Shown here: piece by piece, positions 8,281 through 36,277 of the stretch
Position numbering within the stretch: the stretch's first letter is position 1
Layout: the number at the start of each line of letters is the position of its first letter
Assembly (NCBI GenBank): GCA_002269645.1
Contig: NIVC01004166.1
Coordinates: forward strand, 1 to 57,140
Reading direction: 5' to 3'
DNA: 57,140 nt
DNA from: Macrostomum lignano
Taxonomy: Eukaryota
Translations under genes and position numbers: made by a program
The notes under the pieces: generated by a model
Database searches by the model: none
Seen by the model: the letters and a program-made list of their open reading frames with translations, nothing else
What the model was told of the DNA's origin: nothing

Positions 8281-8305
8281 ACTCGCAAGCCCCAAATAAA
8301 TGAGC

Positions 8306-8511
8306 AGTGAGCACCATGAGTGAGCACCATGAGTGAGCACCATGAGTGAGCACCATGAGTGAGCACCATGAGTGAGCACCATGAGTGAGCACCATGAGTG
8401 AGCACCATGAGTGAGCACCATGAGTGAGCACCATGAGTGAGCACCATGAGTGAGCACCATGAGTGAGCACCATGAGTGAGCACCATGAGTGAGCACCATG
8501 AGTGAGCACCA
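8306..8511. repeat. 13-bp minisatellite (GAGTGAGCACCAT)n
   Basis: About 16 perfect copies. Confidence 0.98.
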
Positions 8512-8926
8512 TGCTCCTGAAAAACTCAGCAGCCGGCAGCCACAGCGGCAGATATCAGAGCTCACGCAAGTCGCCGAGGCTTTGGCGAAGTCCGACTGCT
8601 TCGCCAGAGTCCCCTGCTGCTCGGTCACCGTCCCGACGACGCCGCCGTCGCCGCTTCCACCGGGGCCGCCACCACCCAAATCAACAGCGCAGGCCCACAG
8701 ACAAGTCATGTTCTGATTGGCTGACAGATAAATGATGAGAGTACAGCTCGACTCAAATTGCCGCCTGATGCTGCCAGAGGTCTCTGATAAACGAGTTCTG
8801 AACAACTTTGAGCCCGGGAAACGAACGCAAAAGTAAAGCATCGGCGAGGGGACTTTAAAGGCAAACCGAATCCAATGGGAGGCGTTGGCCAATCAGAGGT
8901 CGCTATGGATTGAGTGCAGAGCTAGC

Positions 8927-9380
<454 letters not shown>

Positions 9381-9743
9381 GGCAGGCGGGTAACTTCTGA
9401 ATTTACTGCCAGTAGATTTAGCAGGGAAAGAGGAAATTCCAATTGAAATTACTCTGATTCAAGATGGCTTTTGCAGTTATGAAAGCTACGAGCGTACAAC
9501 ATGCTATATTTTGTCGCTCAGTGTATTAATAACCGTGTATGATTTATAGTCTGCATAATTTATATTTAGAAAATTCCAGAAAGTAAATAGAATCTCTTGC
9601 TAATCCTTGCTTTCGCAGATGCCGTGAAGGAAACAGACAGCAATGGAGGATTATAAGTGACGCCAAACTGCGCATTAGTAAAATTCAGAAAAGTAATTAT
9701 TAATTAAAGAAAGCACGAAGCCTTAATACCCACGTAGATGAGT

Positions 9744-10205
9744 CCATCATTGCCTGTCTGTCACTAGCTGTTTAACTAAAAACCTGTCCATCATTGCCTG
9801 TCTGTCACTAGCTGTTTAACTACAAACCTGTCCATCATTGCCTGTCTGTCACTAGCTGTTTAACTAAAAACCTGTCCATCATTGCCTGTCTGTCTCTGGC
9901 TGTTTAACTAAAAACCTGTCCATCATTGCCTGTCTGTATCTGGCTGTTTAACTAAAAACCTGTCCATCATTGCCTGTCTGTATCTGGCTGTTTAACTAAA
10001 AACCTGTCCATCATTGCCTGTCTGTATCTGGCTGTTTAACTAAAAACCTGTCCATCATTGCCTGTCTGTATCTGGCTGTTTAACTAAAAACCTGTCCATC
10101 ATTGCCTGTCTGTATCTGGCTGTTTAACTAAAAACCTGTCCATCATTGCCTGTCTGTATCTGGCTGTTTCCCCTAAAAACCTGTCCATCATAGCAACGCC
10201 TGTCT
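9744..10205. repeat. 43-bp minisatellite (AAAACCTGTCCATCATTGCCTGTCTGTATCTGGCTGTTTAACT)n
   Basis: About 10 tandem copies with a variant gradient. Confidence 0.97.
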
Positions 10206-10642
10206 GTCAACACCAACCCTTAGTCTCATCCAGTTCTCTCCATGCTCAGCCCAAAATACACCTGTTGAGAGTTTGGGCGGATAATTTTTTTCACAAATCC
10301 ACCAAGCTAAGGGAGTGCTGAATATCCTTATGGGAAATATATATCCCAACTCTAAAGGCTGCTTCTTTAATTATGCATGGAAACATAAATATTCTATAAG
10401 CAAATTTCTTTGCATACTGGAAACCGCCCTGCATCCTATCTACAGTTTGCAATGCATTTATTTAAGCTTCAGTCAACTTCGAGATGGAATGCAATAGCTG
10501 TGCGAATATAACCAGCAGCAGACATCCCAGCCCTACCATCCCAGGTTAAAAATGGAATAAGCACTAAAATTTTTATTTGCTCAATATAGATAGAGGAAGA
10601 ACTCCCAGAATGCTATCTAGCAGCACTAATTGCTGCCAGAGT

Positions 10643-10683
<41 letters not shown>

Positions 10684-11117
10684 TGAACTCAAATCTCAAT
10701 AGCGGTACAATTTCAGTTCTTTTAAGATAAAAAAGCTGTCTTTGCAAACGGCGTTTTTCGAGTACAATGTAGCAGCTAGGGGTTATAGTGCGGCAGATAC
10801 AGAGAATATCATTATTATGCTTTGGTTTTCTCTCCTTTTAATTGGAATAATGCTAATATTAATAATCATTCGTGTTAAAAACATATGCGACATAAAAGTT
10901 CTAAAGTGTTCAACCTAATTAGTCAAAACCTAATTAGCTTTAAACACAAGATGCCGTTCTGACTATACATACTGTACATGAAGTTTAAAAACTTTCCAGC
11001 TAGTTAACCTAAAAAATCCACTTAATTAACAATAAACAAACTAATAAGCCTAAATTAGACCCATTTATTAGCCTGAAAATACATGTAGCTACCAAATTAG
11101 TCGGAAAGTGGCTAACC

Positions 11118-11340
11118 AATTAGCCTGAAAATGGCTACCCAATTAGCCTGAAAATGGCTACCCAATTAGCCTGAAAATGATTACCCAATTAGCCTGAAAA
11201 TGGCTACACGATTAGCCTGAAAGAGGCTACCCAATTAGCCTGAAAATGATTACCCAATTAGCCTGAAAGTGGCTACCCAATTAGCCTGAAAATGGCTACC
11301 CAATTAGCCTGAAAATGATTACCCAATTAGCCTGAAAATG
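11118..11340. repeat. 23-bp minisatellite (CCAATTAGCCTGAAAATGGCTAC)n
   Basis: About 10 tandem copies. Confidence 0.96.
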
Positions 11341-12733
11341 GCTGCATGGCTGAATATGACAATTGTCACAAGTACTCTCGCACTTAAACAGCGAACCCAA
11401 CTGCAAAGGTGCAGCGTGACATCACGTGACACTAAATACTCACGGGCGTCTCCGCGGTCGAACAGGAGCACGAGCAAAGATTGTCGCGAAGCCGTCGGCG
11501 AAACGATTCGCCAAGGCTCGGCTGCTGGTGCATGCTCAGGCTTTCAACTAATCAGTTAAAGGCACTTAGCCTGTCATTTTCTTGTTCTTTTCTTCCGTCT
11601 CAATTCCAGAAGAGGTTGCCTGCTCACCAGTTTGTTTAATACTGTCGTGCTGCCATTCTATGACTTGAAAGACCTCAAAGGGCACAAGTGTTCCGATGTG
11701 AACCTGGCGTGAGCGATCTCTCTCCTCTTCTGTTCTTCGCTTTCGAAAAGCTGCAAGCGTGCTGCCTTTCACCCCACCCCGCCAATTCTCTCTCTATCTG
11801 CCGCAATTCGCGGGTACCGCAGCAGCGGCATTCGACCCGAGCTACCCTCCGCCCTACCCAGACACGCGCACAAGCCCACCACCCAACCACAGGTCGAGAG
11901 CGAGTGGTTTCTCTCTGTTCGCCATCAACCCCAACCCCCCCTCCCCCCCCCTAAGCAAGCTCATATGGTTCATATGGCTCGGCCCAGGCATGAGTCATGA
12001 ATTCTCCGGCCGGCAGGCGAACGGCTAACCAGACCATTGCTCTGGCAGCGGTACATGTACGCCCTCCAATATTGCAGTGTACATGCATTTGCGGCGAATT
12101 AAAACTTGGCGATTTAATGTACAAGGGTGCAATGCTCTTGACTCCGTGTTGATCGAATGAAGACACAACTAACTTGTTCTTGGATTAACATAACAATAAA
12201 ATGCTTCAATTATGGAAACAAAGTACATTATGTATATTCCTTTCGGCAGGGCCTAAAACCTGACAATGTAAAAAATTTGACAAAAAATCAATAAAAGATG
12301 AACATATTTAACATATAGTATTCTCACACGCAAATGATATGCACTCTATTATAGTTTATTTGTTTTAATAAATATACAATAAACACAAAAGCAGAATTGC
12401 ATATCAGGTGCGATCGGCACTCTTAGCTTAGCTTAATTTGACAGCGAATTTCATATAAAAATATCTCCCCACGAAATGCAGTTGAATGAAACACTACTGG
12501 AGTTAGCTGGGCTGAGTCCAAGTATTTTTAATCTACTCCTACTGAGTGCCGCCCCGGTGCTATCTTGTACCTATTAAAAAATCACAAATCAAACAACACG
12601 TATCTATTTATGAACGGAACGAGTAGTTATATTTTTCTCAAGCAAACGGATTTGGATACAATAAATATCAAATATCAATCATAAGCGGTTTCAGTGAATA
12701 AGCAAATGTGCTGTGAATTTGTACGAAGCTTGA

Positions 12734-15700
12734 TCAGCGATAGTGCACAACCCGTTGCTCGCGCTGGCCACCGGCGAAGACGCGACAAATGATGTACATT
12801 CTAAGAATTTGAGAGGGTGGAAATCCGCGCGGTTGATTGATGCAAGCATTCTAGCCGTTTAAATCACCCGAAACCACTGAGATAATCCTGCTGGGATTGC
12901 AATAACACTGAGATAATCCTGCTGGGATTGCAATAACACTGAGATAATCCTGCTGGGATTGCAATAACACTGAGATAATCCTGCTGGGATTGCAATAACA
13001 CTGAGATAATCCTGCTGGGATTGCAATAACACTGAGATAATCCTGCTGGGATTGCAATAACACTGAGATAATCCTGCTGGGATTGCAATGATACTGAGAT
13101 AATCCTGCTGGGATTGCAATGATACTGAGATAATCCTGCTGGGATTGCAATGACATTGAGATAATCCTGCTGGGATTGAAATAACACTGAGATAATCCTG
13201 CTGGGATTGCAATGATACTGAGATAATCCTGCTGGGATTGCAATGATACTGAGATAATCCTGCTGGGATTGCAATGATACTGAGATAATCCTGCTGGGAT
13301 TGCAATGACATTGAGATAATCCTGCTGGGATTCCAATGGCACTGAGATAATCCTGCTGGGATTGCAATGATACTGAGATAATCCTGCTGGGATTGCAATG
13401 ATACTGAGATAATCCTGCTGGGATTGCAATGATACTGAGATAATCCTGCTGGGATTGCAATGATACTGAGATAATCCTGCTGGGATTGCAATGACATTGA
13501 GATAATCCTGCTGGGATTCCAATGGCACTGAGATAATCCTGCTGGGATTGCAATGATACTGAGATAATCCTGCTGGGATTGCAATGATACTGAGATAATC
13601 CTGCTGGGATTGCAATAACACTGAGATAATCCTGCTGGGATTGCAATAACACTGAGATAATCCTGCTGGGATTGCAATAACACTGAGATAATCCTGCTGG
13701 GATTGCAATGATACTGAGATAATCCTGCTGGGATTGCAATAACACTGAGATAATCCTGCTGGGATTGCAATGATACTGAGATAATCCTGCTGGGATTGCA
13801 ATGATACTGAGATAATCCTGCTGGGATTGCAATGATACTGAGATAATCCTGCTGGGATTGCAATGATACTGAGATAATCCTGCTGGGATTGCAATGACAT
13901 TGAGATAATCCTACTGGGATTGCAATGACAGATAATCCTGCTGGGATTACAATGACACTGAGATAATCCTGCTGGGATTGCAATGATACTGAGATAATCC
14001 TGCTGGGATTGCAATCACGCCTATGCAGAAGCTGAAAAATGGGGAAAGAAAATTCCCTAAGAAACTAATGCTTTTCCCAGCCCCAATGACCTATGCAGAT
14101 TTTAAAAACAGTGTCAGACAAATCTAATCGCCTTGTCCAAAAATAATAGAATGGAAAATTGAAATTATGTGTTCTCAGCTGCATGTTCAGTATTAGATTC
14201 GTCAGTTGCGCCATTGCAAGTAGTGAAAACAATTGCGTAACAAGAGCAGGCATCAATTGCAAAGTTTAGAGCATAAATTTAAGGGCGTCATAAAATGCTG
14301 TACATTATTAGATAGAAATTTTGGCAGACAACTCAAATGTACATATTTATTGAGATCTATTGTGATTAAGGGATTGAGAAACAATGAATAGACTATGTAC
14401 ATTCATAAAGTAGAACATGCCTCTTATCACAAGTTTGCTAACACGCAGACTTCCTTTGAAAATAAAGTTGCAGTCAATTGAAACAATTACCCTCAGTACT
14501 CAAATCAGTTCTCTGGCCTCGCGATGCCAAACTTTCGACGCACACATGAAGAGAATCGTATCTGGTGCTGCATCCTCTGCTTCCGCAAAGCCGATCGCGT
14601 TATTTCAGCTGCTCAAGCAGAACTCATCGAGCAATTTATCCTGCCAGAATTCTGTCATGCCTACATCCGTAATACTCTGCCAGGAGGCATGTGCAGCTGC
14701 TGCAGCAAGAAATTGCAGTCACAGACGTCACCTGTACCGCAAGAACTGCCTGCTCGACTGCCATACCTTCAAATTGTTGCAGATTTGGAGGTTTTGCCAC
14801 AACTCACACGTGAGCATCCGCACTGCTCCTGCTGTATCTGCCAGGTAGTTTCCAGCCCATCAAACAAGCGGGTGGCGGTCTGGCACCCATACATGTCTGA
14901 CAGCAGCCGGGCCAACCATAAATTGCCCCAAGGACGACCTGCAGAAACAACTCGAAGCCAGGACAGAGACTCGGAGAAGCGCTGCACTAGGTGCCACTCA
15001 CTTGTGGGCAAAGGCCTAAGGCACAAGTGCAGCGTCTCCAGCAAGTTGCAGTACCTGCGCACGCTCAGCCCTACATCAAAAGAGCACATCGCTCATGACG
15101 TGATGCGTGAAAAGCTAAGAGCAGCAGCAGCATCAGGACATGGATCAACGGCTTCTATTTCCAGCGCCACCGGTGGCCCACCAATGCAGCTGAGGCATGC
15201 AAGTGATTCAAATGAGCAGAGAGCGCTGAGGACCGAGACACTAGTAACGTTAAAGACATCTCTCAATCTGAGTGACCGGCAGACAAACATGGCAGCCACA
15301 ATTATCAGGCAGGCGGAGGGCAGTCGTAAGGCCGTGCAACCCGGACTGCGGGCAGCTCTGGCAGCCGCAGGCAGCATCGCAGAGAGTTTTTTTGAGATGC
15401 GGCAGCTCAAATTCACTCAAAAGTCCTCAGGTGGCAGCTTTACTGATACCACAAGATGTTCCGTCATATGCCCCGATCTGCAGGGCCTGCTGAGCTTCAT
15501 TTGCTCAAAGCGAGGATTTAGTGAGTTCGATGTGAGATTGAAGCTAGGGATGGACGGAGGTGGTGGCTCGCTAAAAATCTGCCTTAGTGTCGCCCCAGTA
15601 CTGCCTACCGAACCACAGGCAGAGTCCACACCTAAGAAGCTGAGCAGGGAGTCGCGAATAAGCAACTTTGGCATAAAAAAACTGTTTATCATCGCGATTG

Positions 15701-18700
15701 CTGAGGATGTCCAGGAGAACTATGCAAATGTGCGAGCACTTCTAGATGAGCTAGACTTGACATCGATTAAGTTCACAGTCGCTTGCGACTTCAAGCTAGC
15801 CAACATCCTGTGTGGCCTTCAAAGTCATGCCGCAGCTCATCCTTGTCTCTACTGTGAGGGGCAGGCGCCGTGGCAAGTTGCCGGTTCCATGAGAACCCTT
15901 GGATCCATTCGTCGGATGGCCACGGCATTCGAGGCTGCTGGTAGCTGCCAGCGACTGGCACTTACTTAACTTAACTTAGCTGCAGGGCGGTCCGAAGACG
16001 CAGCGGGGAGGCGAGCGTCGCCCATTCCGCTAATCCCTGAAAGACCCGCATAGGCTAGGGCGCGGGGCCGGTCAGGGAGGTCTGCCGGTCCTGTCTGCAG
16101 CGTTGTCTTCGGTGGGGAAGACGGAGGCTCGCTTGGTGGCCCGGAGGAACCGGATGAGCCGTGGGATGTTCTCGGGCCGGCAAACGTCGTCCAGGGACGG
16201 GTTGGGCCCGAGGTGGTTGAGCCGGTCTCGGTTGAAGGCCGGGCAGTAGCAGACGAAGTGCATGGCATCTTCATTCTCGAGGCTGCAGAAGGGGCAGAGT
16301 TCACTCCGGCGAACACATCGGAGGAAGCAGTGCCTGGCAAAGCAACCGTGACCTGTGAAGGTCATAGTGAGAGCGCGGATATCTTTTCGATTTTGATTCA
16401 AAAGGATTCTCCGCAGCTTGAGGGACGGATTGGGCACTGCCGCACGAGATTGGCGGCAGTTGGAGATACCATCCCATCTGCGCAAGTGCAGGATGTCCGC
16501 CCAGTCGTTAATCTGACGATTAATGACTGTGGCGGGGATGGGGGCCAGGGGCACGGGGCCAAGGGGCGAGCCGGAACAGCCCGCCTTAGCGAGGGAGTCG
16601 GCGAGCTCGTTACCTTTGAAGCCGGCGTGTCCTGGGATCCACGTGAGCCGGACGGTGTTCCTCCGAGCCAGCTTGTTGAGCTGCCCGATACAGTCGCGGA
16701 CTGTTCGGGAGTTCGTAGTGGTGTGACACAGGGCCTGTAAAGCGGCCTGGCTGTCAGAGTGGAAGAAGATTCTTCTGTCCTTGAAGTCCTTGCGGTGGAG
16801 CTCAGCTGCACAGGAGCTGATGGCAAGGACTTCATTCTGGAAGACGCTGGAGAGTCTGCCAGTGTGTTGGGCGTGAGTAGCAATCACGCGGCCGTTGATA
16901 AGGATGCAGACTCCAAAGCCGGATAAACCGTCTTTGGAGGATCCGTCAGTGAAGCAGTGAACCTCCTGAGGGGCCCAGCTGTCGTTGGCGTTCTCCCTGG
17001 AGGGGATCGTGACCTTGAAGCGTTGGTAGAGGTTGAGGGAGCGCGGTTCAGCGTCCGAAAGGACAGCCGCACTCCCACTCTCCTCCAGAACTTTAAGGCA
17101 CAGGTCAGAGTGCGGCAGGAGCTTGCGCTTCGCCATCGCTCTTTGTGGCTTGAAGCTAACACCAGCCTCGATGAGCCGGCGGGTGGTTTTAGCAGCCTCG
17201 CGACGGACAAAGATGTCCAGAGGCGGGAGGCAGAGAAAGGCGTTGAGGCCGTCAAAGGGAGCAGAGAGCGGGGCATTCAGGATCATGCGGCACGCACGTC
17301 CCTGCACCTTTTTGAGGGCTTCGTGGCAGGTTTTAATCTGCAAGGCGCTGGTCCAGACCAGGCCGGCGTATGTAACGGCCGGTCGGACCATTGCGGTATA
17401 GATCCACCAGAGACGCTTTGGGGTGAGGCCCCAGGTGGTGCCGACGGCTCTGCGCAGCTGCGCAAGAATCGCGAGGGCTTTTTTGGTTTTGGCCTGGACG
17501 TGGGTGGACCAGCTCAGCCGGTGGTCCAGCGTAACGCCGAGACACTTGGTTTGCTTGCAGGATGGAATTTCCACCCCGTAAAGCTTTAGTGGGCGAATAC
17601 GCCAGTTTACCCTGCTGGTGAACATGATCGCGACAGTTTTGGTCTCGGAGAGCCTGAGGCCGCACCTGTCCGCCCAACGTTCAGCAGAGCGAATGAAGTT
17701 TTGCAAAAGATCTCTAAGGGTTTCAGGTGACGGTCCGGATGCCACGGCTGTGACATCATCGGCGTAACCGACCTTGAGGATGGGGTCAAGATGGCTGTCC
17801 TGGAGGAGCTCATCGATGACCATGTTCCAGAGAACTGGAGAGAGGACACCGCCCTGGGGGCTGCCTTTGCAGACGGTTACCGTCCGTTGGTGGCCCAACA
17901 GGTGTGCGGTGGCAGTACGGTGGCTGATCATATACATGATCCACCGGGTGAGGTGCGAGTGGGTTCCTCTAGCACGTAGAGCTCTGTCAAAGGCCTCAAA
18001 GAGGACATTATCGAAGGCTCCAACAATGTCGAGGAAGACAGCGAGAGCGTAGCCATTACCAAGAACGGCTTTCTCCAGCATGTCAACCAGAACGTGAAGC
18101 GCGCTCTCCGTGGACCTGCCTGCCCGAAAGGCATGCTGGTTCTCACTGAGCGGCTTGTTCTTCAGTTCCACAGAGAGGAGGCGCCAGAGCACCAGTCTCT
18201 CTAACAGCTTCACCAATGAGGAGGTGAGGCTAATTGGTCTGAAGGATTTAATGGACCGGTAGTCCGGTCGGCCAGGCTTGGGGATAAAGACCACCTTGGC
18301 CTCGGTCCAGGATTTCGGAACAAAGCCGAGCACAATGCAGGCTTTCAGAAGCCGGCAAAGGTTCCGCAGGAAACCGGTGCATTTCACCGCCTCCCGCAGG
18401 AAGGCTGGCACAACGCCGTCCGGTCCTGGGGATTTGAAGGGTTTGAAGGAGGAGACAGCTTTAGTAACGCGGTCCTCCGTGATGATTGAGTCAGCCAGTA
18501 CGTGTCCGCCCACTGAGTGGTCAGGGGGGCCGGGCCTAGCTGGCTCGTTCGGGAAAAACGCTGTTAGCATCGCTTCCAGTGTTTCTCCTGGGTTCTCAGT
18601 GAGCGAGCCGTCGGCTCTCTTGACTGAGGAGAGTTTGGACATTTTGTCCAGGGTGAGGGCTTTAACGATTCTGGAGGTGGGGCGGGAGCCCTCAAGTTCC

Positions 18701-21700
18701 TCACAGTATTCGCGCCACTTGTTGGTTTTGGCGTTCCTAACCTGCCTCTTGAACTCGTGGATAGAGTTCAGGTAGGCGGTTTGGTCGGCCGGGTTTTTAG
18801 TTTTTTGGGCCCTGCGGTGAAGCCTTTTGGCTCTGCGACGGAGGTCGCCAAGCTGCGGGTTCCACCATGGGGCCGACTGTTTGCCTTTATATGCCTTTAG
18901 TGGGCATGAGGCTTCGAAGGCAGCAGTGAGCGAGTCCGTAAGTGCGGCCGCAAATTCATCTGCTTCTTCGCAGGTGTTGATGGAGACTGGAGCGCTAGTG
19001 CAACGATAGGTCTCCTCCAGGGCAAGCCTGAAGGCGGTCCAGTCGGTATTCCTAGCATTCCGTTTCCAGTAAAGCTGGCCTGCGTTACGGGCGCTGGCCA
19101 GCGTGAAAGAGATGAACTTGTGATCGGAGAGGGACGCCTCAGGAAGCACCCGCCATTCCCTAGTGCTCTGGAAGAGCCTGGGCGTGGCGAGGGTGGCATC
19201 CAGCACCTCCGATCGGCGTCCGTTATTGAAGGTAGGGGTACTACCCGAGTTACAGAACTCAAGGGTTGTAGTAGCAATATAAGCCAGGAAGTCTTCACCT
19301 CTCTGGTTTATATCAGAACTGCCCCAGTGGGTGTGGTGGGCATTGATGTCACCTGCCACGAGCAGCTCATAGTTTCTGGTGGAGCAGAGCTCGACCAGTG
19401 TGACAAGCTCTACTGGGATCATCTCGCCGTCGCCCGGTAGGTAAACCGAGGCGATGAGGGTAGTCCTCCCAGGGAGTATGTCTTCAGACTGGATGACACA
19501 GATGTCCCTGGTGGACAGGTCTGATCTGAGCCATGCGTTAATAGAACTGGACACCATGATGCAGGATCTTGGTGCCAGGTTTCCCTCCCGGGTACCAGCG
19601 GTTAAACACTGGTAGCCGGTGGGGACATGTTGGGGGCTGCCCCTAAGCGTCCAAGGTTCCTGGATAAGGATAATCCCTGGCACGTATTGGTCAGTGTGCT
19701 TCAAGAGGTTGACTGAAGCAGCAATGCTGTGCTGCAGGTTGACCTGCAAGCAGTGGATGCCCTGGGAGACAGTCATGTCTACTGTCCAGGGGAGGAGAAA
19801 AGCAACTCATTCTCAGCCTCATCGGTGAGAGTTGAGTCGCCAATTTCCATTGGCTCAGGCTCAGCCGCCTCCCCAGCCGCCGCGGAGGCGGACACGGCGC
19901 CCACGGCAGGTGAGTCACCTAGCCGCGCTACACCGCCCTCCTCCCAGCGACTGGGGTACGGCTGCTGCCTTCGCCTTGCGCCCCGCCGTCGGGAGTCTGA
20001 GCTCGGCCGGCAGCGTCCTCCTGGTGGTAATCCCACCAGTTGGAAGGCTGAGCCGTGCCGTCGTCCAGTTCCCTCGGCTGGCTTTCAGTGTTTTTTCGAG
20101 CGGCACGAGTCTGCTCGAGGTGAAGTCTCAGAGACTGAGCTTCGTCAAGTGCGCGCTGGATTAGACCGGACCGCCGGCTACTGCGGGCGGGTCTACGTCC
20201 GCGCGAGGCGGACTCAGCAGCGCGAATAGCCTTGTTAGGCTCGGGATCGGGTTGCTGCTGCCGCTTGGCCGGCGGGGCATGAGCCCCAGCTCCGGGAGCG
20301 GCGCGCTTCCCGTCTTTCTTGGTCTCCACCTTGCCCTCCTCACAGCGGAGGATGGTCAGTTGATGGAGACCAAGGTGGAGGTTTGTGCCGTGCGGTAGCC
20401 GCTTGGCCCATCCCTCCGTCAGGCCGAGGATGACTGTGGCCCCGGTCGTGCCCTTGCGGACCGTGCTGTGGTACACAAGACCACTGGCGTCGAGATCCGG
20501 GTGCCGCTTGAGCAGGAGCTGCCGCAGCTGCTCCCCGGACTTGATTGCACTGTCGGCCGGGACCCAAATCCGATGGCGGATGGTCTTCGGCCGCTCGCTC
20601 TCCAAGGCGAAGGTCAGCTGGCCCAGGTCGCTGTGCCAGTCGAACTTGGGCAGCTGATCCCGCAGGAGCTGGGTGCTCTCCTCGGATTTGCACCACAGTA
20701 GGATGCACCCGTTCGCCTTGGTGGACTTGACGATGTCCACGAAGACGCCCTCCAGGGTTAGATTGAGCAAGCCCTCGTCGATGGTACGCCACGCGACGTC
20801 GAGCTGCTCGGGCGTCAGGTCGAAATCCCCGCCGAGGATCATCACGGCGGGTTGCAGCGGCTGCTTGACCTTGGACGCGTAGGACTCGGAGGTCTTGAGC
20901 GGGGCCGCTTTGTCTTTGGAAGGCGGTAGGCCGGCAGGGTTGCCCCCTGAGAGCCCGAGGACACGGCGGTTCCTGACGGCCCAGCCGCGCCACCGGACTC
21001 CCCAGAGGGCCTCCCCGCTGCGGTGGCTCCCGAAGGCCTCACCGCGGCTTGCGTGCCCTCCTCAGACGCAGCAGCAGCCCGCTTCTCCTGCCGCTTACGG
21101 TTGCGGCGGATGTTCCGCTGTCGTCGAGACTCGGCCGTGCGCGGTCGGCTAGACTGGCGGCCAGGGTGATCGGCGGCAGCGTCAGCTGGCCCGGTTGGAC
21201 CAGGTTGGGCGTTGGTGCTACCAGTGGTAGCTACCGGAGCGGCTGATCCCGGTGAGCCAGAGGCGACCGGGTCAGTTTCTTTAGGGATGGTGGCGTTAGT
21301 GGCCATAGCTGAAAAGCGGGGGAGGGCTACTCGTTATGCGAGTTGAGTACCCGACTGGCCGACACCTCAAGCCAGCCGGTTTGAAAAAAGGACCGCTAGC
21401 GACCGGACTACTCCCCGGCCTTCCAGCCCATCGGCACGGTCAAACACCTTAGGCATTAGAGGGTACGTTAAGCAGTACCACGGCCTGCAGGCTGGTGAGC
21501 CAGACCCGCATACCCAAATTCGGCCGAAGCCACTGGATAGGGTCGCCAGCGCCGGAGCCCAGTCTGTCCAGCAGCCCTAGGGTCTGCCTTGAACACACGC
21601 GGGGACGAGTACCCCTGGGTCGACTTGCGAGACAGCGTGGGGGAGTCTGCGGCTGCCAGAGGCAAATAGAGGGTGCAGACCTCCCACCAGCCTTGACCTG

Positions 21701-24700
21701 CTGAAGATGGGGGCAGGCGTGAAGCATCGCAGACCTTAGCTCGTAGGCCTAGTCTGTCTCATACTTCACTGGCATGCTGAATACGCCTTCGCGTGCCAGC
21801 GACTGGCAAGAAACTACGCAAGCTGTGTCAGACGGCCTCTTCTCCCTGGGGCTGATTCTACGCCAATGCTGGACCTCGTGCCACCACCAGAGCTGCACAT
21901 CATGCTTGGTGTGACCAACAAACTGCTCGATCAGCTGAACTCAGCTTGGGGCGACGACAAGGCATACAAGTGGGCGCATTCAGCTGGAATCTGTCGCGAG
22001 CAGTACCACGGCGGGTGTCTGGAAGGCCCTGCGTGTGTCAGATTGCTGCTTAAAGCTCAAGAGCTCAAGAGCAACCTGCCATCAAGGCTCCAGGGCTATG
22101 CGTCTGCTCTTATGGCATTCGATGCTGTTCGCCAAGCATGCTTTGGGCAACAGCTGATGAGCGACTTTTGCCAGAAGATTGCCCAGCTGGAATCCTGCTG
22201 CGCTGAACTGAAGCTGGTGCCGACACCTAAGATGCACGCCCTTTTCCACCATGTTCCGGAGTTCTGCGAGCGATTCAACTCAGGCCTTGGGACCTTCAGT
22301 GAGCAGGCAGTCGAGTCTGCACACAGCGACTTTCGTTTGACGTGGCAGCGGTTTCGCAGGCCTCTGGGGCATGTGCAGTATGCAGAATGCCTGCTGCGCG
22401 CAGTTGTTAGCTACAATTCCAGCCATATTTGATGTCAAGCATTTTTATGCCTGCCAAGATTTCTAGGATTTAGCTTGTGTACTTAACATCCATGCGCACT
22501 TTATTCCATACGGACATTAGCAATAATAAGTGCATGGTTCTCATTTTATAATATTAATACTAATACATTTGCACGTTCCTTTAATGATTAAAAATAATAT
22601 TAAAACTACGAACTTATATTAACATTAATATTATCGATGGGTTTCGCCTTAAATACCTATCATATTACATGTAATTTGCATATAATATAAAAAATTCATA
22701 TTACCATTTTTGACAAGGCGATTAGATTTGTCTGACACTGTTTTTGAAATCTGCATAGGTCCTTGGGGCTGCGAAAAGCATCAGTTTCTTTGGGAATTTT
22801 CTTTCCCCATTTTTCAGCTTCTGCATAGGCGTGCAATGATACTGAGATAATTCTGCTGGGATTACAATGACACTGATATAATCCTGCTGGGATTGCAATA
22901 ACACTGAGATAATCCTGCTGGGATTGCAATGATACTGAGATAATCCTGCTGGGATTGCAATGATACTGAGATAATCCTGCTGGGATTGCAATGACACTGA
23001 GATAATCCTGCTGGGATTGCAATGATACTGAGATAATCCTGCTGGGATTGCAATGACACTGAGATAATCCTGCTGGGATTGCAATGATACTGAGATAATC
23101 CTGCTGGGATTGCAATGACACTGAGATAATCCTGCTGGGATTGCAATGATACTGAGATAATCCTGCTGGGATTGCAATGATACTGAGATAATCCTGCTGG
23201 GATTGCAATGATACTGAGATAATCCTGCTGGGATTGCAATGATACTGAGATAATCCTGCTGGGATTGCAATTACACTGAGATAATCCTTCTGGGATTGCA
23301 ATGATACTGAGATAATCCTGCTGGGATTGCAATGATACTGAGATAATCCTGCTGGGATTGCAATGATACTGAGATAATCCTGCTGGGATTGCAATGACAC
23401 TGGGATAATCCTGCTGGGATTGCAATGACACTGAGATAATCCTGCTGGGATTGCAATGATACTGAGATAATCCTGCCGGGATTGCAATGATACTGAGATA
23501 ATCCTGCTGGGATTGCAATGACACTATGATAATCCTGCTGGGATTGCAATGACAGATAATCCTGCTGGGATTGCAATGGCACTGAGATAATCCTGCTGGG
23601 ATTGCAATGACACTGGGATAATCCTGCTGGGATTGCAATAACACTGAGATAATCCCACTGGGATTGCAATGACACTGAGATAATCCTGCTGGGATTGCAA
23701 TGATACTGAGATAATCCTGCTGGGATTGCAATGATACTGAGATAATCCTGCTGGGATTGCAATGACATTGAGATAATCCTACTGGGATTGCAATGATACT
23801 GAGATAATCCCCACTGGGATTGCAATGATACTAAGATAATCCTGCTGGGATTGCAATGACACTGAGATAATCCTGCTGGGATTGCAATGACACAGATAAT
23901 CCTGCTGGGATTACAATGACACTGAGATAATCCTGCTGGGATTGCAATGACACAGATAATCCTGCTGGGATTGCAATGACATTGAGATAATCCTACTGGG
24001 ATTGCAATGACAGATAATCCTGCTGGGATTCTAATGGCACTGAGATAATCCTGCTGGGATTGCAATGACACTGGGATAATCCTGCTGGGATTGCAATGAC
24101 ACTGAGATAATCCTTCTGGGATTGCAATGGCACTGAGATAATCCTGCTGGGATTGCAATGACACTGGGATAATCCTGCTGGGATTGCAATGGCACTGAGA
24201 TAATCCTGCTGGGATTGCAATGACAGATAATCCTGCTGGGATTGCAATGGCACTGAGATAATCCTGCTGGGATTGCAATGACACTGGGATAATCCTGCTG
24301 GGATTGCAATGACACTGAGATAATCCTGCTGGGATTGCAATGATACTGAGATAATCCTGCTGGGATTGCAATGATACTGAGATAATCCTGCTGGGATTGC
24401 AATGATACTGAGATAATCCTGCTGGGATTGCAATGACACTGAGATAATCCTGCTGGGATTGCAATGATACTGAGATAATCCTGCTGGGATTGCAATGATA
24501 CTGAGATAATCCTGCTGGGATTGCAATGACACTGAGATAATCCTGCTGGGATTGCAATGATACTGAGATAATCCTGCTGGGATTGCAATGACACTGAGAT
24601 AATCCTGCTGGGATTGCAATGATACTGAGATAATCCTGCTGGGATTGCAATGACACTGAGATAATCCTGCTGGGATTGCAATGATACTGAGATAATCCTG

Positions 24701-27700
24701 CTGGGATTGCAATGATACTGAGATAATCCTGCTGGGATTGCAATGATACTGAGATAATCCTGCTGGGATTGCAATGATACTGAGATAATCCTGCTGGGAT
24801 TGCAATTACACTGAGATAATCCTTCTGGGATTGCAATGATACTGAGATAATCCTGCTGGGATTGCAATGATACTGAGATAATCCTGCTGGGATTGCAATG
24901 ATACTGAGATAATCCTGCTGGGATTGCAATGACACTGGGATAATCCTGCTGGGATTGCAATGACACTGAGATAATCCTGCTGGGTTTGCAATGATACTGA
25001 GATAATCCCACTGGGATTGCAATGATACTAAGATAATCCTGCTGGGATTGCAATGACACTGAGATAATCCTGCTGGGATTGCAATGACACAGATAATCCT
25101 GCTGGGATTACAATGACACTGAGATAATCCTGCTGGGATTGCAATGACACAGATAATCCTGCTGGGATTGCAATGACATTGAGATAATCCTACTGGGATT
25201 GCAATGACAGATAATCCTGCTGGGATTCTAATGGCACTGAGATAATCCTGCTGGGATTGCAATGACACTGGGATAATCCTGCTGGGATTGCAATGACACT
25301 GAGATAATCCTTCTGGGATTGCAATGGCACTGAGATAATCCTGCTGGGATTGCAATGACACTGGGATAATCCTGCTGGGATTGCAATGGCACTGAGATAA
25401 TCCTGCTGGGATTGCAATGACAGATAATCCTGCTGGGATTGCAATGGCACTGAGATAATCCTGCTGGGATTGCAATGACACTGGATAATCCTGCTGGGAT
25501 TGCAATGACACTGAGATAATCCTGCTGGGATTGCAATGATACTGAGATAATCCTGCTGGGATTGCAATGATACTGAGATAATCCTGCTGGGATTGCAATG
25601 ATACTGAGATAATCCTGCTGGGATTGCAATGACACTGAGATAATCCTGCTGGGATTGCAATGATACTGAGATAATCCTGCTGGGATTGCAATGATACTGA
25701 GATAATCCTGCTGGGATTGCAATGACACTGAGATAATCCTGCTGGGATTGCAATGATACTGAGATAATCCTGCTGGGATTGCAATGACACTGAGATAATC
25801 CTGCTGGGATTGCAATGATACTGAGATAATCCTGCTGGGATTGCAATGACACTGAGATAATCCTGCTGGGATTGCAATGATACTGAGATAATCCTGCTGG
25901 GATTGCAATGATACTGAGATAATCCTGCTGGGATTGCAATGACATTGAGATAATCCTGCTGGGATTGCAATGACACTATGATAATCCTGCTGGGATTGCA
26001 ATGACAGATAATCCTGCTGGGATTGCAATGGCACTGAGATAATCCTGCTGGGATTGCAATGACACTGGGATAATCCTGCTGGGATTGCAATAACACTGAG
26101 ATAATCCCACTGGGATTGCAATGACACTGAGATAATCCTGCTGGGATTGCAATGATACTGAGATAATCCTGCTGGGATTGCAATGATACTGAGATAATCC
26201 TGCTGGGATTGCAATGACATTGAGATAATCCTACTGGGATTGCAATGATACTGAGATAATCCCACTGGGATTGCAATGATACTAAGATAATCCTGCTGGG
26301 ATTGCAATGACACTGAGATAATCCTGCTGGGATTGCAATGACACAGATAATCCTGCTGGGATTACAATGACACTGAGATAATCCTGCTGGGATTGCAATG
26401 ACACAGATAATCCTGCTGGGATTGCAATGACATTGAGATAATCCTACTGGGATTGCAATGACAGATAATCCTGCTGGGATTCTAATGGCACTGAGATAAT
26501 CCTGCTGGGATTGCAATGACACTGGGATAATCCTGCTGGGATTGCAATGACACTGAGATAATCCTTCTGGGATTGCAATGGCACTGAGATAATCCTGCTG
26601 GGATTGCAATGACACTGGGATAATCCTGCTGGGATTGCAATGGCACTGAGATAATCCTGCTGGGATTGCAATGACAGATAATCCTGCTGGGATTGCAATG
26701 GCACTGAGATAATCCTGCTGGGATTGCAATAACACTGGGATAATCCTGCTGGGATTGCAATAACACTGAGATAATCCTGCTGGGATTGCAATGACACTGA
26801 GATAATCCTGCTGGGATTGCAATGATACTGAGATAATCCTGCTGGGATTGCAATGATACTGAGATAATCCTGCTGGGATTGCAATGATACTGAGATAATC
26901 CTGCTGGGATTGCAATGACACTGAGATAATCCTGCTGGGATTGCAATGATACTGAGATAATCCTGCTGGGATTGCAATGACACTGAGATAATCCTGCTGG
27001 GATTGCAATGACACTGAGATAATCCTGCTGGGATTGCAATGATACTGGGATAATCCTGCTGGGATTGCAATGATACTGGGATAATCCTGCTGGGATTGCA
27101 ATGATACTGGGATAATCCTGCTGGGATTGCAATGATACTGAGATAATCCTGCTGGGATTGCAATGACATTGAGATAATCCTGCTGGGATTGCAATGACAC
27201 TGAGATAATCCTGCTGGGATTGCAATGATACTGAGATAATCCTGCCGGGATTGCAATGATACTGAGATAATCCTGCTGGGATTGCAATGACACTGAGATA
27301 ATCCTGCTGGGATTGCAATGACACTGAGATAATCCTGCTGGGATTGCAATGACACTGAGATAATCCTGCTGGGATTGCAATGATACTGGGATAATCCTGC
27401 TGGGATTGCAATGATACTGGGATAATCCTGCTGGGATTGCAATGATACTGGGATAATCCTGCTGGGATTGCAATGACACAGGAGCTGGGAATACAATGAC
27501 ACTGAGACAAAGAACTCACGAGGTGGCACCCAGCAGGAAGGAGGCGGCATGGCTGATCCAGCTTAGTAGCACAGAGCCGTCGCGCACCAGGCGAGTCTTG
27601 CGCAGACTGAGAAAGCGCCAGATTTGAAATTGGCGCGAGCCTGCCGTCTGGGAGCTGAAAAAATACCGCTCATTTATATCACGATTTGAGCTACTTATAG

Positions 27701-33055: not shown

Positions 33056-33271
33056 GGGTCTGCCTTGAACACACGCGGGGACGGATACCCCTGGGTCGAC
33101 TTGCGAGACAGCGTTGGGGGGTCTGCGGCTGCCAGCGGCAATAGAGGGTGCAGACCTCCCACCAGCCTTAACCTGCTGAAAATAGGGGCAGGCGTGAAGC
33201 ATCGCAGACCGTAGCCCATAGGCCTAGCCTGTCTCATACTTCACTGGCGTGCTGAATACACCTTTGCGTGC
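33056..33271 (-). mobile_element. Isolated 5' end of a related Loa-like LINE, including a truncated HDV-like ribozyme
   Basis: Strong similarity to 21581-21796, starting at the same GCACGC; diverges inside P4, and no J4/2 plus P2 3' strand was found. Confidence 0.85.
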
Positions 33272-34097: not shown

Positions 34098-36277
34098 TAG
34101 GGGTGTTCGGGGTTCGGGTTTCGGGTCGGGTTTCGGGTCGGGTTTTGGCACCGGGTTCGGGGTTCGGGGTAGGCGGTCGGGTTCGGTTTTCGGGTCGGGT
34201 TTTGGGTTTTCAGGGTTTTCGGGTTTTTTATATTTTTACGAGTTGAAACGAAATCAAGCGTAAACTGACTTGACTTACTTGACTTAGCTGCAGGGGGCGT
34301 CCGGCGGATGCAGCGGGGAGGCGGAGGAGACCGCCCATTCCGCTAGCCCCTGGCGACCAATGACTTCCGTTGAAGTGAAGTCGCTCAGGGGGACCCGTCG
34401 GTCTCGCCTGCAGCGCGATCCTCCTCACCGACAGTGGGGAAGAAATCAGCTCGTCCGGTGTCCCTGAGGTACCGGGCGAGCAGCGGGATGCTCTCGGGCC
34501 TGCAAACGTCGGAGAGAACCGGGTTTGGCCCGAGGTGAGTGAGCCTGGCCCTGGTGAAAACCGGGCAGTGGCAGATAAAATGCTCGGCGTTTTCACTGCC
34601 AGAGCGGCAGAAGGGGCACCGCTCCTCGCGTACCTGGCCCTGAAGGAAGCGGTGGCGAGAGAAGCAGCCATGCCCGGAGAGGGCCATGCTAACTGCTCTG
34701 AGGTCTCTGCGGTTGAGCCTGAGGAGGGCTCTACGCAGGAGAGGGGAGGGGCAGGGGACGGCCGCCCGGGATTGCCTACAATTCCGGGTGTCGTGCCACC
34801 TGCGGAGATGCTCGGAGTCAGCCCAGCGCTTAACGCGGGAGTTGATCACCGAGGCGGGGATGGGGGCCCCGGGCCCGGTCCCAGCAACGCGCCGGCGGAG
34901 CCAGCCTTGGCCAGCAGGTCGGCGCGCTCGTTGCCGAGGAAACCGGCGTGGCCCGGGATCCATCTGAGCTCTACCTGGTTGCCTAGCGCAAGCCCGTTGA
35001 GCTGGGTGTTGCAGTCCAGGACGGACCTGGAGCTGGTGGTGCAGCGGCAGAGGGCCCGAAGGGCTGCTTGGCTGTCAGAGTGAAAAATAAGCTTCCGACC
35101 GCTAAGCTGCCTTCGGCGCAGTTCTGCCGCGCAGGAGCTGATGGCAAGCACCTCGCTCTGAAAAACACTGGAGTTGAGCCCAGTGTGCTGGGAGTAGCTC
35201 CACGCCACTTCTCCCTTGAAGAAGACGCACGCTCCGAAGCCTGAAAGACCATGCTTCATAGAGCCGTCAGTGTAACAGTGGACTTCAGAATCGCTCCAGC
35301 TGTCACTCGCCTCATGTCGAGGCTGAATAGTGACCTTATACCTTTGGCTCAGGAGAAGGGTGGCTGGGATCGAGTCCGAGAGGATGTTGAGCCCGCCACA
35401 TTCTTCTAGAGCCTTGAGGCAGAGGTCAGAGTGCGGGATAAGCGACCGCTTCTTAAAGGCCCGCACTTTCTTGAAGGCCACCCCAGCATCCAGAAGACGC
35501 CGGGTGCTCTTCGCCGCCTCTCCTTTGATATATGAAACTGAGTATTTCCAGGTTTTTTCGCGTATGTTTAGTTTTTTAAATCGTTATAAATATCATTCTA
35601 GTATGCTACCTTACCTTATAATGCGCAACAATTTACACAAATGACAAATTAAGGCTTTGTCAAGAATCCGTTTAGAAAAAAACTGAATTTATAATATTAT
35701 AGCCTTCTCCGAGCAAGAGAAGACCATATTGGTATTATGGTATGTAGAGCCTGTCACTATTAGTGAGTGAGAGAGTCAAAGAGAGGCAGTGCTAAATAAA
35801 ATGTAAAGCCGGTACGAAACGATACCATCTTTGGAGAAAAAAGATTTCGTTGAATAGAATGGAGTCGAAAAAAATAGAAAACTTGTTTTTTCTCGCCTTC
35901 ATTCCTTTGAAACAGTTTTTGATTCAGCTTATGACTTATGGTGTGATGAAGCCTTGGACGTTAGAGAACTTGGAGCCCTTGAAGAAAAGCAGATAATATA
36001 ACCCTTTGCAGTGTCTCGACATGATACTGCAGTGTTACGAGCTGTTACGAGTGTTCAAGCGCGCTTAAAAATACGAAAAATAGTGCAACTATTTTGATTC
36101 TGATTGAGTATTGATGTTTTTTCGGGTAGAATTTCGAGGTCGGGTCGGATTGGATTTTGGGTCCGGGTCGGTTTCGGGTTCGGGTAGGGTGTTCGGGTCG
36201 GGTTCGGGGTTCGGGGTTATAGCTTCGGGTTTGAGTTCTACTCCGAACCCGAAAAAATGGAAACCCGAGCACCCCTA
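34098..36277. mobile_element. Non-autonomous hAT-like element (~0.9 kb without the LINE insert)
   Basis: 14-bp TIR TAGGGGTG(T/C)TCGGG at 34098 and ending 36277; subterminal CGGGTT/CGGGTC repeat blocks at both ends; imperfect flanking duplication GCGTAGA (34089-34095 and 36278-36284). Confidence 0.65.
34269..35532 (-). mobile_element. 5'-truncated Loa-like LINE copy (RT C-terminus, RNase H, CCHC, 3' UTR, (CAAGT/TAAGT) tail)
   Basis: HCYTDGS, SVFQSEVLAI, SDSQAAL, WIPGHAGFLGNERAD, CPFC...H...C; 3' UTR homologous to 15961-16040; possible 7-bp TSD AAACTGA (34262-34268, 35535-35541). Confidence 0.92.

What the first reader, a model, noticed from the sequence alone, without database searches (positions are those of the whole stretch)
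21555..21796. Complete HDV-like self-cleaving ribozyme defines the 5' end of the Loa-like LINE
Seen (minus strand): P1 GCACGCG/CGCGTGT with a G1-U wobble, P2 (GA)CCCAG/CTGGG(C)TC, P3 GGG/CCC, L3 TACTCGT, P1.1 AC/GT, a P4 hairpin and J4/2 CAGA, all in nested double-pseudoknot order. A ~170-nt J1/2 separates the P1 5' strand from the core, so simple motif scans would miss it. An independent copy (33271) begins at the same GCACGC with different upstream DNA. Known: HDV-like ribozymes process the 5' ends of R2, L1Tc/Ingi, RTE and Loa-clade (Baggins) elements. Inference: this element is transcribed by read-through from host or transposon promoters and cuts itself out 5' of G21796.
Basis: partly seen in the sequence, partly recalled or inferred. 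Interest (0 to 1): 0.85.

Follow-up and report, generated by a model that had tools for sequence, protein, structure and literature searches.

The report
HDV-like ribozyme at LINE 5' end
The first ~245 bases of a full-length LINE retrotransposon in the flatworm Macrostomum lignano fold into the double-pseudoknot of an HDV-like self-cleaving ribozyme whose predicted cut site is exactly the element's first base; this is a well-supported new example of a known trick, not a new kind of thing.

Summary
On the minus strand, 21796-21551 contains every element of an HDV-like ribozyme in the right nested order. These are a 7-bp P1 with a G1-U pair, P2, a 3-bp P3, a 7-nt L3 (U..CG), a 2-bp P1.1, a P4 hairpin and J4/2 CAGA, with a ~165-170 nt structured J1/2.

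A strict descriptor finds only this site in both strands of the window, and 0.01 sites per shuffled window. G21796 is independently the LINE's first base, shown by a 12-nt target-site duplication, a 700-aa host ORF restored when the insert is removed, a second 5' fragment (33271), and a related contig (L001) that starts at the homologous G.

Between the window and L001, P1, P1.1 and P2 carry five two-sided compensatory changes and no internal break. L3 U1, C5 and G6 and the J4/2 C are invariant in every copy that includes them.

Caveats:
- No Rfam model matches.
- Only two relatives could be fetched.
- Both relatives keep the C but not the RRA of J4/2.
- This copy has a poorly cleaved G at -1 and a frame-split ORF1.
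- Cleavage itself is untested.

Long J1/2 loops and 5'-end cleavage are already described for R2, Baggins, RTE and L1Tc. This is a new member of a known kind.

The parts
15961..21796 (-). Full-length non-LTR retrotransposon. It has the 5' UTR with the ribozyme, ORF1 and ORF2, and a 3' tail GCTAAGTTAAGTTAAGTAAG.
   Evidence: Pfam finds APE, RT and RNase H in ORF2. The TSD and the restored empty-site ORF fix both ends.
21797..21808 (-). 5' copy of the 12-nt target-site duplication TGCCAGTCGCTG. The 3' copy is at 15949-15960. A further GCA (21796-21794 and 15948-15946) is shared as junction microhomology.
   Evidence: Joining the flanks with one TSD copy gives a continuous 700-aa + strand ORF.
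21790..21796 (-). P1 5' strand GCACGCG. The predicted cleavage is 5' of G21796.
   Evidence: It pairs 7/7 with 21601-21595. Positions 3 and 4 covary with their partners in L001.
21783..21794 (-). Competing local 5' hairpin ('Alt-P1'): ACGC (21794-21791) pairs with GCGT (21786-21783), loop GAAG.
   Evidence: The equivalent hairpin in L001 is CCTGC/GCAGG, with two compensatory changes.
21625..21789 (-). J1/2 peripheral domain, ~165 nt, with three conserved hairpins at about 21769-21719, 21718-21696 and 21686-21639.
   Evidence: RNAalifold on window A, copy B and L001 predicts 49 pairs, 7 with two-sided changes. Single-sequence fold.
21615..21624 (-). P2 5' strand: extension GTCG (21624-21621), loop A21620, core CCCAG (21619-21615).
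   Evidence: The core and the extension are both present in L001 and L002, with compensatory changes.
21602..21614 (-). P3 GGG (21614-21612), L3 TACTCGT (21611-21605), P3' CCC (21604-21602). L3 positions 2-3 (A21610, C21609) form P1.1.
   Evidence: P3 and L3 positions 1, 5 and 6 (U, C, G) are invariant in window A, copy B, L001 and L002.
21593..21601 (-). P1 3' strand CGCGTGT (21601-21595) followed by the P1.1 3' strand GT (21594-21593).
   Evidence: All five substitutions in this 9-nt block between the window and L001 keep the pairing.
21567..21592 (-). P4 hairpin: GGCAG-A-CC / loop CTAG / GG-CTGCT (21588-21570). TC/GA closing pairs are possible at 21592-21591 / 21568-21567.
   Evidence: -8.9 kcal/mol. 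L002 has nearly the same stem and L001 has an unrelated 11-bp hairpin in the same place.
21563..21566 (-). J4/2 CAGA. C21566 is the predicted general-acid cytosine.
   Evidence: It fits the CRRA descriptor (PMC6326823). In all three complete cores the C lies 3 nt after P4 and 3 nt before P2'.
21551..21562 (-). P2 3' strand: CTGGG (21562-21558), loop CTC (21557-21555), extension CGGC (21554-21551).
33056..33271 (-). Copy B, a solitary 5' fragment (element nt 1-217, 92.6% identity). It has the same first base and different upstream DNA, and it ends inside P4.
19931..21306 (-). ORF1, split over two reading frames in this copy. The ATG 21306 frame closes at 20844. The conserved-domain frame is open from 21061 to 19931.
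   Evidence: ORF1 is uninterrupted in L001 and L002.
16072..19776 (-). ORF2, 1234 aa, intact: AP endonuclease, reverse transcriptase and RNase H.

Best explanation
The 5' UTR of this Macrostomum lignano LINE encodes an HDV-like self-cleaving ribozyme with a large structured J1/2 insertion.

The proposed mechanism is inferred. When the element is transcribed as part of a longer RNA, the first 7 nt pair with a strand ~190 nt downstream to form P1. P2, P3, P1.1 and P4 complete the nested double pseudoknot. C21566 in J4/2, together with Mg2+, then cuts the backbone immediately 5' of G21796. This releases an RNA whose 5' end is the first base of the element and carries no flanking sequence, and that RNA is copied back into DNA. 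By analogy with R2 and L1Tc, the cleaved fold may also help translation of the uncapped RNA.

What is shown: the fold, its rarity, its position at the exact element end, and its conservation with compensatory changes.

What is inferred: catalysis, co-transcription and any role in translation.
For: 1. All helices and junctions are present in the canonical order.
2. The window copy meets the published sequence descriptor (PMC6326823) for G1-Y, L3 U/C/G and J4/2 CRRA. P1.1 keeps its 2 bp but as A-U + C-G instead of the descriptor's fixed C-G pairs.
3. The strict descriptor gives a single hit in both strands of the window and 0.01 hits per shuffled window.
4. The P1 start coincides with the element's 5' end, which was mapped independently. 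The evidence is the TSD, a 700-aa host ORF restored by removing the insert, copy B with a different flank, and contig L001 beginning at the homologous G.
5. Window versus L001 (ORF2 60% identical) shows compensatory change. Two pairs change in P1 (A-U to C-G, C-G to U-A). Both pairs change in P1.1. One pair changes in P2, and P2 also gains an inserted pair. G-U becomes G-C at pair 1. There are no internal disruptions.
6. L002 shows a further compensated change and an inserted pair in P2, and the same P4.
7. P3, L3 U1/C5/G6 and the J4/2 C are invariant in every copy that includes them.
8. J1/2 folds into three hairpins that also covary. This matches the activating peripheral domains and extended P2 of large HDV-like ribozymes (PMC4908430). 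J1/2 loops of 216-498 nt are documented in active R2 ribozymes (PMC3774820).
Against: 1. No Rfam HDV-type covariance model matches. This holds at gathering threshold and at E<=10 on the 701-nt region or the 86-nt core, and in the relatives.
2. Only two relatives could be retrieved. One of them lacks the P1 5' strand, so the covariation rests on very few sequences.
3. L001 and L002 keep the C but have CTGC and CGTG instead of CRRA. L002 has only one P1.1 pair. L001 has intact ORFs, so the fold may tolerate this, or it may serve a non-catalytic role there.
4. In this copy the -1 base is G, the worst substrate for HDV ribozymes (PMC8495972).
5. The 5' strand of P1 can be sequestered in a conserved local hairpin.
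6. More distant relatives (ORF2 <=36% identical) show no such motif.
7. There are no biochemical data.
Confidence: 0.78

Rival explanations
1. The 5' end is set by an internal RNA polymerase II promoter that starts transcription at G21796. The conserved double-pseudoknot-like fold would then be a structural 5' UTR element, for example for translation initiation or for binding the element's own proteins, and it would not cleave.
For: - Many LINEs use internal promoters, and L1Tc has both a promoter and a ribozyme in the same 77 nt (PMC3383444).
- L001 and L002 lack the RRA of J4/2.
- No upstream sense promoter is evident for this copy, which lies antisense inside a TIR element within a satellite.
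- R2 ribozyme folds are also reported to bind R2 protein and to act like an IRES (PMC6765202).
Against: - The window copy matches the catalytic descriptor at every fixed position except one P1.1 pair (A-U for C-G), including G1-U, L3 U/C/G and CRRA (PMC6326823).
- P1 pairs from exactly nt 1, which a non-cleaving structure has no reason to do.
- The C is invariant at a fixed distance from P4 and P2'.
- The two explanations are not mutually exclusive.
Confidence: 0.13
2. The fold is a genuine family ribozyme, but this particular copy is a dead relic that no longer cleaves or transposes.
For: - ORF1 is split across two frames.
- The -1 base is G (PMC8495972).
- P4 has a bulge and a G-U pair relative to L002.
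Against: - ORF2 is intact over 1234 aa.
- The ribozyme core has no mismatch in this copy, and it is the best match to the canonical descriptor of the three sequences.
- The frame split could be an assembly error.
- This is a sub-case of the best explanation rather than a true alternative.
Confidence: 0.3
3. The match is a chance assembly of short complementary segments in a GC-rich 5' UTR.
For: - The region is 64% G+C.
- Relaxed descriptors hit GC-rich DNA often.
- The whole-region MFE is no better than shuffles, z = -0.01.
Against: - 0.01 hits are expected per window for the strict descriptor.
- The additional coincidence with the mapped 5' end is worth a factor of roughly 1/300 (inference).
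- There are five two-sided compensatory changes in L001 and more in L002.
Confidence: 0.02

Closest known systems
R2 retrotransposon HDV-like ribozymes, especially the silkmoth and honeybee forms with very long J1/2
   Same: - The double-pseudoknot fold lies at the 5' end of a non-LTR element.
- P1 is 6-7 bp, and P3 and L3 are conserved.
- P4 is variable and J4/2 is poorly conserved apart from the C.
- J1/2 is hundreds of nt long (216-498 nt in silkmoths, P1-P1' up to >700 nt in honeybee; PMC3774820).
- Microhomology at the 5' junction occurs when cleavage is at the element end.
   Different: - R2 is site-specific for 28S rDNA, has a single ORF with a C-terminal restriction-like endonuclease, and is co-transcribed by Pol I.
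- This element has two ORFs, an APE-RT-RNase H ORF2, and inserts at non-rDNA sites.
- There is no detectable sequence similarity to the Rfam models.
Baggins (LOA clade), RTE, R4/Dong and L1Tc/ingi 5' HDV-like ribozymes
   Same: Cleavage is at the very first nucleotide of a dispersed non-LTR element, which releases it from a co-transcript (PMC3774820, PMC6765202, PMC3185411). ORF2 contains an RNase H domain here, as in LOA/I/ingi-type elements (my own knowledge).
   Different: - Those ribozymes are compact. L1TcRz is 77 nt.
- This one carries a ~165-nt three-hairpin J1/2 domain and an extended P2.
- Clade membership of this LINE was not tested.
- Distant ORF2 relatives fetched here show no motif.
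drz-Agam-2 type large HDV-like ribozymes with a P1.2/J1/2 peripheral domain
   Same: Both have a structured J1/2 domain and an extended P2. [quoted passage not shown]
   Different: The J1/2 here is much larger and multi-branched. There is no match to the Rfam drz-Agam models.

Membership tests
HDV-like self-cleaving ribozymes | Nested double-pseudoknot order: P1 - J1/2 - P2 - P3 - L3 - P3' - P1' - P1.1' - P4 - J4/2 - P2' | tested here: met
   All segments are found in this order at 21796-21551 on the minus strand.
HDV-like self-cleaving ribozymes | P1 of 6-7 bp whose first nucleotide is G1 paired to a pyrimidine (PMC6326823, PMC8495972, PMC3774820) | tested here: met
   The window has 7 bp with G1-U. 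L001 has 6 bp with G1-C. Copy B has 6 bp plus a terminal A-C mismatch.
HDV-like self-cleaving ribozymes | 3-bp P3 closed by an L3 carrying the conserved U...C-G (U-G reverse wobble) | tested here: met
   P3 is GGG/CCC. L3 is TACTCGT, TATCCGT, TCTCCGT and TTCTCGT in the four sequences. U1, C5 and G6 are invariant in 4/4.
HDV-like self-cleaving ribozymes | P1.1: L3 positions 2-3 pair with the two nucleotides that follow P1' | tested here: met
   The window has A-U + C-G, copy B has A-U + U-G, and L001 has C-G + U-A (both pairs compensatory). L002 has only 1 of 2 pairs. The canonical form is two C-G pairs.
HDV-like self-cleaving ribozymes | Catalytic C in J4/2, consensus CRRA directly before P2' | tested here: met
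   The window has C21566-A-G-A. In the relatives the C is kept at the same spacing, but the next three bases are TGC (L001) and GTG (L002). The feature is therefore met for the window and only partly met for the family.
HDV-like self-cleaving ribozymes | Covariation supporting the long-range helices P1 and P2 | tested here: met
   Five two-sided compensatory changes plus paired insertions across P1, P1.1 and P2, with no internal break. The sample is very small: one to two informative relatives.
HDV-like self-cleaving ribozymes | Match to curated covariance models (the Rfam HDV-like ribozyme families) | tested here: not met
   There were 0 hits at gathering threshold on the window and on 8 loci. 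There were no HDV-type hits at E<=10 on 21300-22000 or on the core 21545-21630. Likely causes are the 165-nt J1/2 and the fact that these models do not score pseudoknots (inference).
HDV-like self-cleaving ribozymes | Mg2+-dependent self-scission giving 5'-OH and 2',3'-cyclic phosphate ends, abolished by mutating the C | not testable with these tools
   This needs an in vitro transcription and cleavage assay.
Retrotransposon 5'-end ribozymes (Baggins, RTE, R4, L1Tc type) | The cleavage site coincides with the first nucleotide of a non-LTR retrotransposon | tested here: met
   Shown by the TSD, the empty-site ORF, copy B and the start of contig L001. There is a +/-3 nt ambiguity from the GCA microhomology in copy A, which copy B resolves.
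LOA-clade LINE | Phylogenetic placement of the RT with LOA/Baggins reference elements | not tested
   Only the domain architecture APE-RT-RNase H was verified. No reference LINE set is available in these tools.

The most novel reading that the evidence does not exclude
The ribozyme may be a regulated switch rather than a constitutive cutter.

The P1 5' strand has two mutually exclusive partners that both covary between species. One is the distant P1' strand (active fold). The other is a local hairpin partner at nt 11-15 (Alt-P1, inactive fold).

Relatives with intact ORFs have lost the RRA of J4/2 yet keep the whole pseudoknot. This suggests that in this LINE family the HDV fold has a second, selected, non-catalytic role at the RNA 5' end, such as translation or binding of ORF proteins. 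Cleavage timing would then be controlled by the hairpin and by the large J1/2 domain.
Probability: 0.2. Interest if true: 0.55.

Novelty: new member of a known kind. Interest (0 to 1): 0.45.

Why it matters
It extends 5'-end processing by HDV-like ribozymes to a two-ORF LINE with an RNase H domain in a free-living flatworm, Macrostomum lignano, which is a regeneration and transgenesis model. The held literature yielded no paper describing HDV-like ribozymes in Macrostomum, and the Rfam models miss this one completely.

It is a concrete example of a class that motif scanners overlook: a canonical core split by a ~165-nt structured J1/2. It therefore suggests that ribozyme-terminated LINEs are under-counted.

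Practically, it gives an exact RNA 5' end for annotating this TE family. It also offers a compact, testable case of a conserved competing hairpin at the cleavage strand.

Tried and rejected
**Rfam**
- Rfam cmscan gave nothing HDV-like. This covered the whole window at gathering threshold, 21300-22000 and the 86-nt core at E<=10, and 8 related loci.

**Searches for more relatives**
- The metagenome scan with the core pattern GCAAGNCGNCNCAN{1,2}GGGTNNNCGTCCC gave 7 hits. All are GC-rich, apparently bacterial, chance matches with no homology outside the pattern. That collection does not even hold L002's contig.
- ORF1 protein searches, with a single sequence and with a 3-sequence profile, returned only the two relatives already in hand.
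- ORF1-based scans of viral contigs and genome contigs found no relatives.
- Exact look-ups of six window ORFs found none in the collection.
- P0002 had no DNA available, P0006 is not on record, and P0004's contig lacks the 5' UTR.

**Distant relatives**
- ORF2 relatives at <=36% identity (L003, L004, L012-L015) gave no descriptor hit in their 5' regions. A clade-wide ribozyme could not be shown.

**Methods that did not help**
- The MAFFT alignment of the four 5' regions mis-registers the L001 core by one base. Pair counts were therefore made from anchored coordinates in a script and not with the count of structure pairs.
- Plain MFE folding cannot represent the pseudoknot. The window region's z-score is -0.01, so thermodynamic stability alone is uninformative here.

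**Ideas rejected**
- That nt 1-217 is a separate module, as copy B might suggest. L001 and L002 are homologous straight across that point.
I prefer the conserved 1x3 loop + GYCG/CGGC.


Full report
**What is there**

On the minus strand the window holds a full-length non-LTR retrotransposon running from 21796 down to about 15961.
- ORF2 (16072-19776, 1234 aa) has AP-endonuclease, reverse-transcriptase and RNase H domains.
- ORF1 starts at ATG 21306. In this copy it is split over two frames: the ATG frame closes at 20844, and the conserved-domain frame is open from 21061 to 19931.
- The 3' end is a short repeat tail, GCTAAGTTAAGTTAAGTAAG.
- The host is Macrostomum lignano. One UniRef protein of that species is 100% identical over 39% of ORF2, and many others are 51-75% identical.

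**The 5' end is independently defined**

The element is flanked by a 12-nt target-site duplication, TGCCAGTCGCTG (21808-21797 and 15960-15949). A further GCA is shared between target and element as junction microhomology.

Joining the flanks with a single TSD copy restores one continuous 700-aa + strand ORF across the junction. The insertion boundaries are therefore not in doubt.

A second fragment, copy B (33271->33056), is 92.6% identical and begins at the same G, with unrelated DNA upstream. This resolves the GCA ambiguity in favour of G21796.

A related contig, L001 (Logan ERR14788467; ORF2 60% identical, ORF1 and ORF2 intact), begins at exactly the homologous G.

**The fold**

Reading 5'->3' on the minus strand:

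| Element | Coordinates | Sequence |
|---|---|---|
| P1 5' strand | 21796-21790 | GCACGCG |
| J1/2 | 21789-21625 | about 165 nt |
| P2 extension, 5' | 21624-21621 | GTCG |
| loop | 21620 | A |
| P2 5' strand | 21619-21615 | CCCAG |
| P3 | 21614-21612 | GGG |
| L3 | 21611-21605 | TACTCGT |
| P3' | 21604-21602 | CCC |
| P1' | 21601-21595 | CGCGTGT |
| P1.1' | 21594-21593 | GT, pairing with A21610 and C21609 |
| spacer | 21592-21589 | TCAA |
| P4 hairpin | 21588-21570 | GGCAG-A-CC / CTAG / GG-CTGCT |
| spacer | 21569-21567 | GGA |
| J4/2 | 21566-21563 | CAGA |
| P2' | 21562-21558 | CTGGG |
| loop | 21557-21555 | CTC |
| P2 extension, 3' | 21554-21551 | CGGC |

P1 is 7/7 paired with a G1-U first pair.

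The window copy satisfies the descriptor distilled from sequence comparison of HDV-like ribozymes: G1-Y, L3 U/C/G with the U-G reverse wobble, a 2-bp P1.1 and J4/2 CRRA (PMC6326823). The one departure is that one P1.1 pair is A-U instead of C-G.

**Chance**

I coded a strict descriptor with these requirements:
- a 5-bp P2 abutting a 3-bp Watson-Crick P3;
- a 7-nt L3 with U1 and G6;
- a 2-bp P1.1;
- a C four nt before P2';
- a 7-bp P1 starting with G-U, within 300 nt.

It hits only this site in both strands of the 57-kb window. In 200 shuffles that preserve dinucleotides within 2-kb blocks it hits 0.01 times per window.

The P1 5' strand is also exactly the first seven bases of the element as mapped by the TSD. 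That adds a factor of roughly 1/300 (inference).

**Covariation**

Only two relatives with usable 5' regions could be fetched:
- L001 is complete.
- L002 (JGI contig; ORF1 58% identical) starts inside J1/2 and so lacks the P1 5' strand.

Window versus L001:

| Helix | Window | L001 | Changes |
|---|---|---|---|
| P1 | GCACGCG/CGCGTGT | GCCTGC/GCAGGC | A-U to C-G; C-G to U-A; G-U to G-C; terminal 7th pair lost |
| P1.1 | A-U + C-G | C-G + U-A | both pairs compensatory |
| P2 | CCCAG/CTGGG | CTCAGA/TCTGAG | one compensatory pair; one pair inserted on both strands |
| P2 extension | GTCG/CGGC | GCCG/CGGC | U-G to C-G |

All five substitutions in the 9-nt P1'+P1.1' block are accounted for by pairing.

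L002 has P2 CCCAAA/TTTGGG (G-C to A-U, plus an inserted A-U), the same extension, and nearly the same P4 as the window. L001 has an unrelated 11-bp hairpin at the P4 position.

P3 and L3 U1, C5 and G6 are invariant in all four sequences. In all three complete cores the J4/2 C lies 3 nt after P4 and 3 nt before P2'.

**J1/2**

The ~165-nt insert is not a random spacer. RNAalifold on window A, copy B and L001 gives three hairpins, at about 21769-21719, 21718-21696 and 21686-21639. Seven of the predicted pairs change on both sides.

Large natural HDV-like ribozymes with structured J1/2 domains and an extended P2 are known. [quoted passage not shown]

Active R2 ribozymes have J1/2 loops of 216-498 nt, and P1-P1' separations exceed 700 nt in honeybee (PMC3774820). 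The long J1/2 explains why simple scans and Rfam miss this site, but it is not itself new.

**What speaks against, or limits, the claim**

- No Rfam family matches at any threshold tried, in the window or in the relatives.
- The comparative sample is tiny, and further searches found nothing more.
- L001 and L002 have CTGC and CGTG where the window has CAGA, so the purine-purine-A after the C is not conserved. L002 also has only one P1.1 pair. R2 ribozymes likewise conserve little in J4/2 beyond the C and one A (PMC3774820). Even so, L001 has intact ORFs, so either RRA is dispensable here or the fold has another role.
- In this particular insertion the -1 base is G, the least cleavable for HDV ribozymes (PMC8495972).
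- ORF1 is frame-split in this copy, so the copy may be inactive.
- ORF2 relatives at <=36% identity show no motif.

**An extra feature**

The P1 5' strand can also pair locally: nt 3-6 ACGC with nt 11-14 GCGT. This hairpin appears in the MFE fold.

L001 has the equivalent CCTGC/GCAGG hairpin, and the same two positions are compensated there as well.

The P1 duplex is more stable than the hairpin, at -10.4 versus -5.1 kcal/mol. Two mutually exclusive, co-varying partners for the cleavage strand suggest a folding switch (inference).

**Context of this copy**

The LINE sits antisense inside the 700-aa ORF of an element with 127-nt terminal inverted repeats (14016-14142 and 22707-22833). That element is itself inserted in a 31-bp satellite (12875-14015 and 22832-27479).

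Nothing upstream looks like a sense-strand gene, so the read-through model remains an inference for this copy.

**Comparison with the known**

HDV-like ribozymes that cut at the first nucleotide of non-LTR elements are established for R2, R4, Dong, Baggins, RTE and L1Tc (PMC3774820, PMC6765202, PMC3185411).

In function and architecture this is one of them, closest in form to the long-J1/2 R2 ribozymes and the drz-Agam-2 type with peripheral domains.

The structural membership criteria are met, the curated-model criterion is not, and catalysis is untestable here. The 'Loa-like' label was not tested.

The held literature yielded no paper describing HDV-like ribozymes in Macrostomum. For Schistosoma LINEs only twister variants had been linked (PMC8501958).

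**Verdict**

This is a new member of a known kind and is of moderate interest.

Noticed in passing
window 21783-21796 (-); L001 2-15: A conserved local 5' hairpin sequesters the P1 5' strand (window ACGC/GCGT, L001 CCTGC/GCAGG). It covaries at the same two positions as P1, so it may act as a folding switch.
   Followed up: partly
window 14016-14142 and 22707-22833; ORF pieces 14482-15960 and 21809-22429 (+): The LINE interrupts a 700-aa + strand ORF with no Pfam match. That ORF belongs to an element bounded by 127-nt, 95% complementary terminal inverted repeats, which is probably a DNA transposon.
   Followed up: partly
window 12875-14015 and 22832-27479: A 31-bp satellite (about 37 and about 151 copies, 93-95% matches) is split by the TIR element. 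The apparent 1402-aa ORF at 23271-27479 (-) is only an open frame through this satellite.
   Followed up: partly
window 33056-33271 (-): Copy B is a solitary 5'-terminal 217-nt LINE fragment with unique flanks on both sides. Ordinary target-primed reverse transcription yields 5'-truncated copies, not 3'-truncated ones. A later deletion or a template-switch chimera is therefore implied.
   Followed up: partly
window 34268-35532 (-): This is a 5'-truncated copy of a sister LINE family, covering ORF2 residues 856-1230 at 60-63% amino-acid identity (66% at the DNA level).
   Followed up: partly
window 20845-21061 (-): ORF1 of the full-length LINE changes reading frame somewhere in this low-complexity stretch, whereas ORF1 is uninterrupted in L001 and L002. 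This is either a real frameshift or an assembly error.
   Followed up: partly
L001 1 and 5965-6492: The Logan contig begins exactly at the element's first base but reads ~530 nt past the element's 3' end. That pattern is expected of a 5'-processed, 3' read-through transcript if the run is RNA-seq. The run type could not be checked.
   Followed up: no
window 1-12000 and 38000-44000: The window carries many other tandem arrays: periods of 4, 13, 14, 23, 24, 37, 44 and 48 bp, including perfect (CTAT)67 at 4492-4761 and (AGAC)114 at 8928-9385. It is a very repeat-rich region.
   Followed up: no
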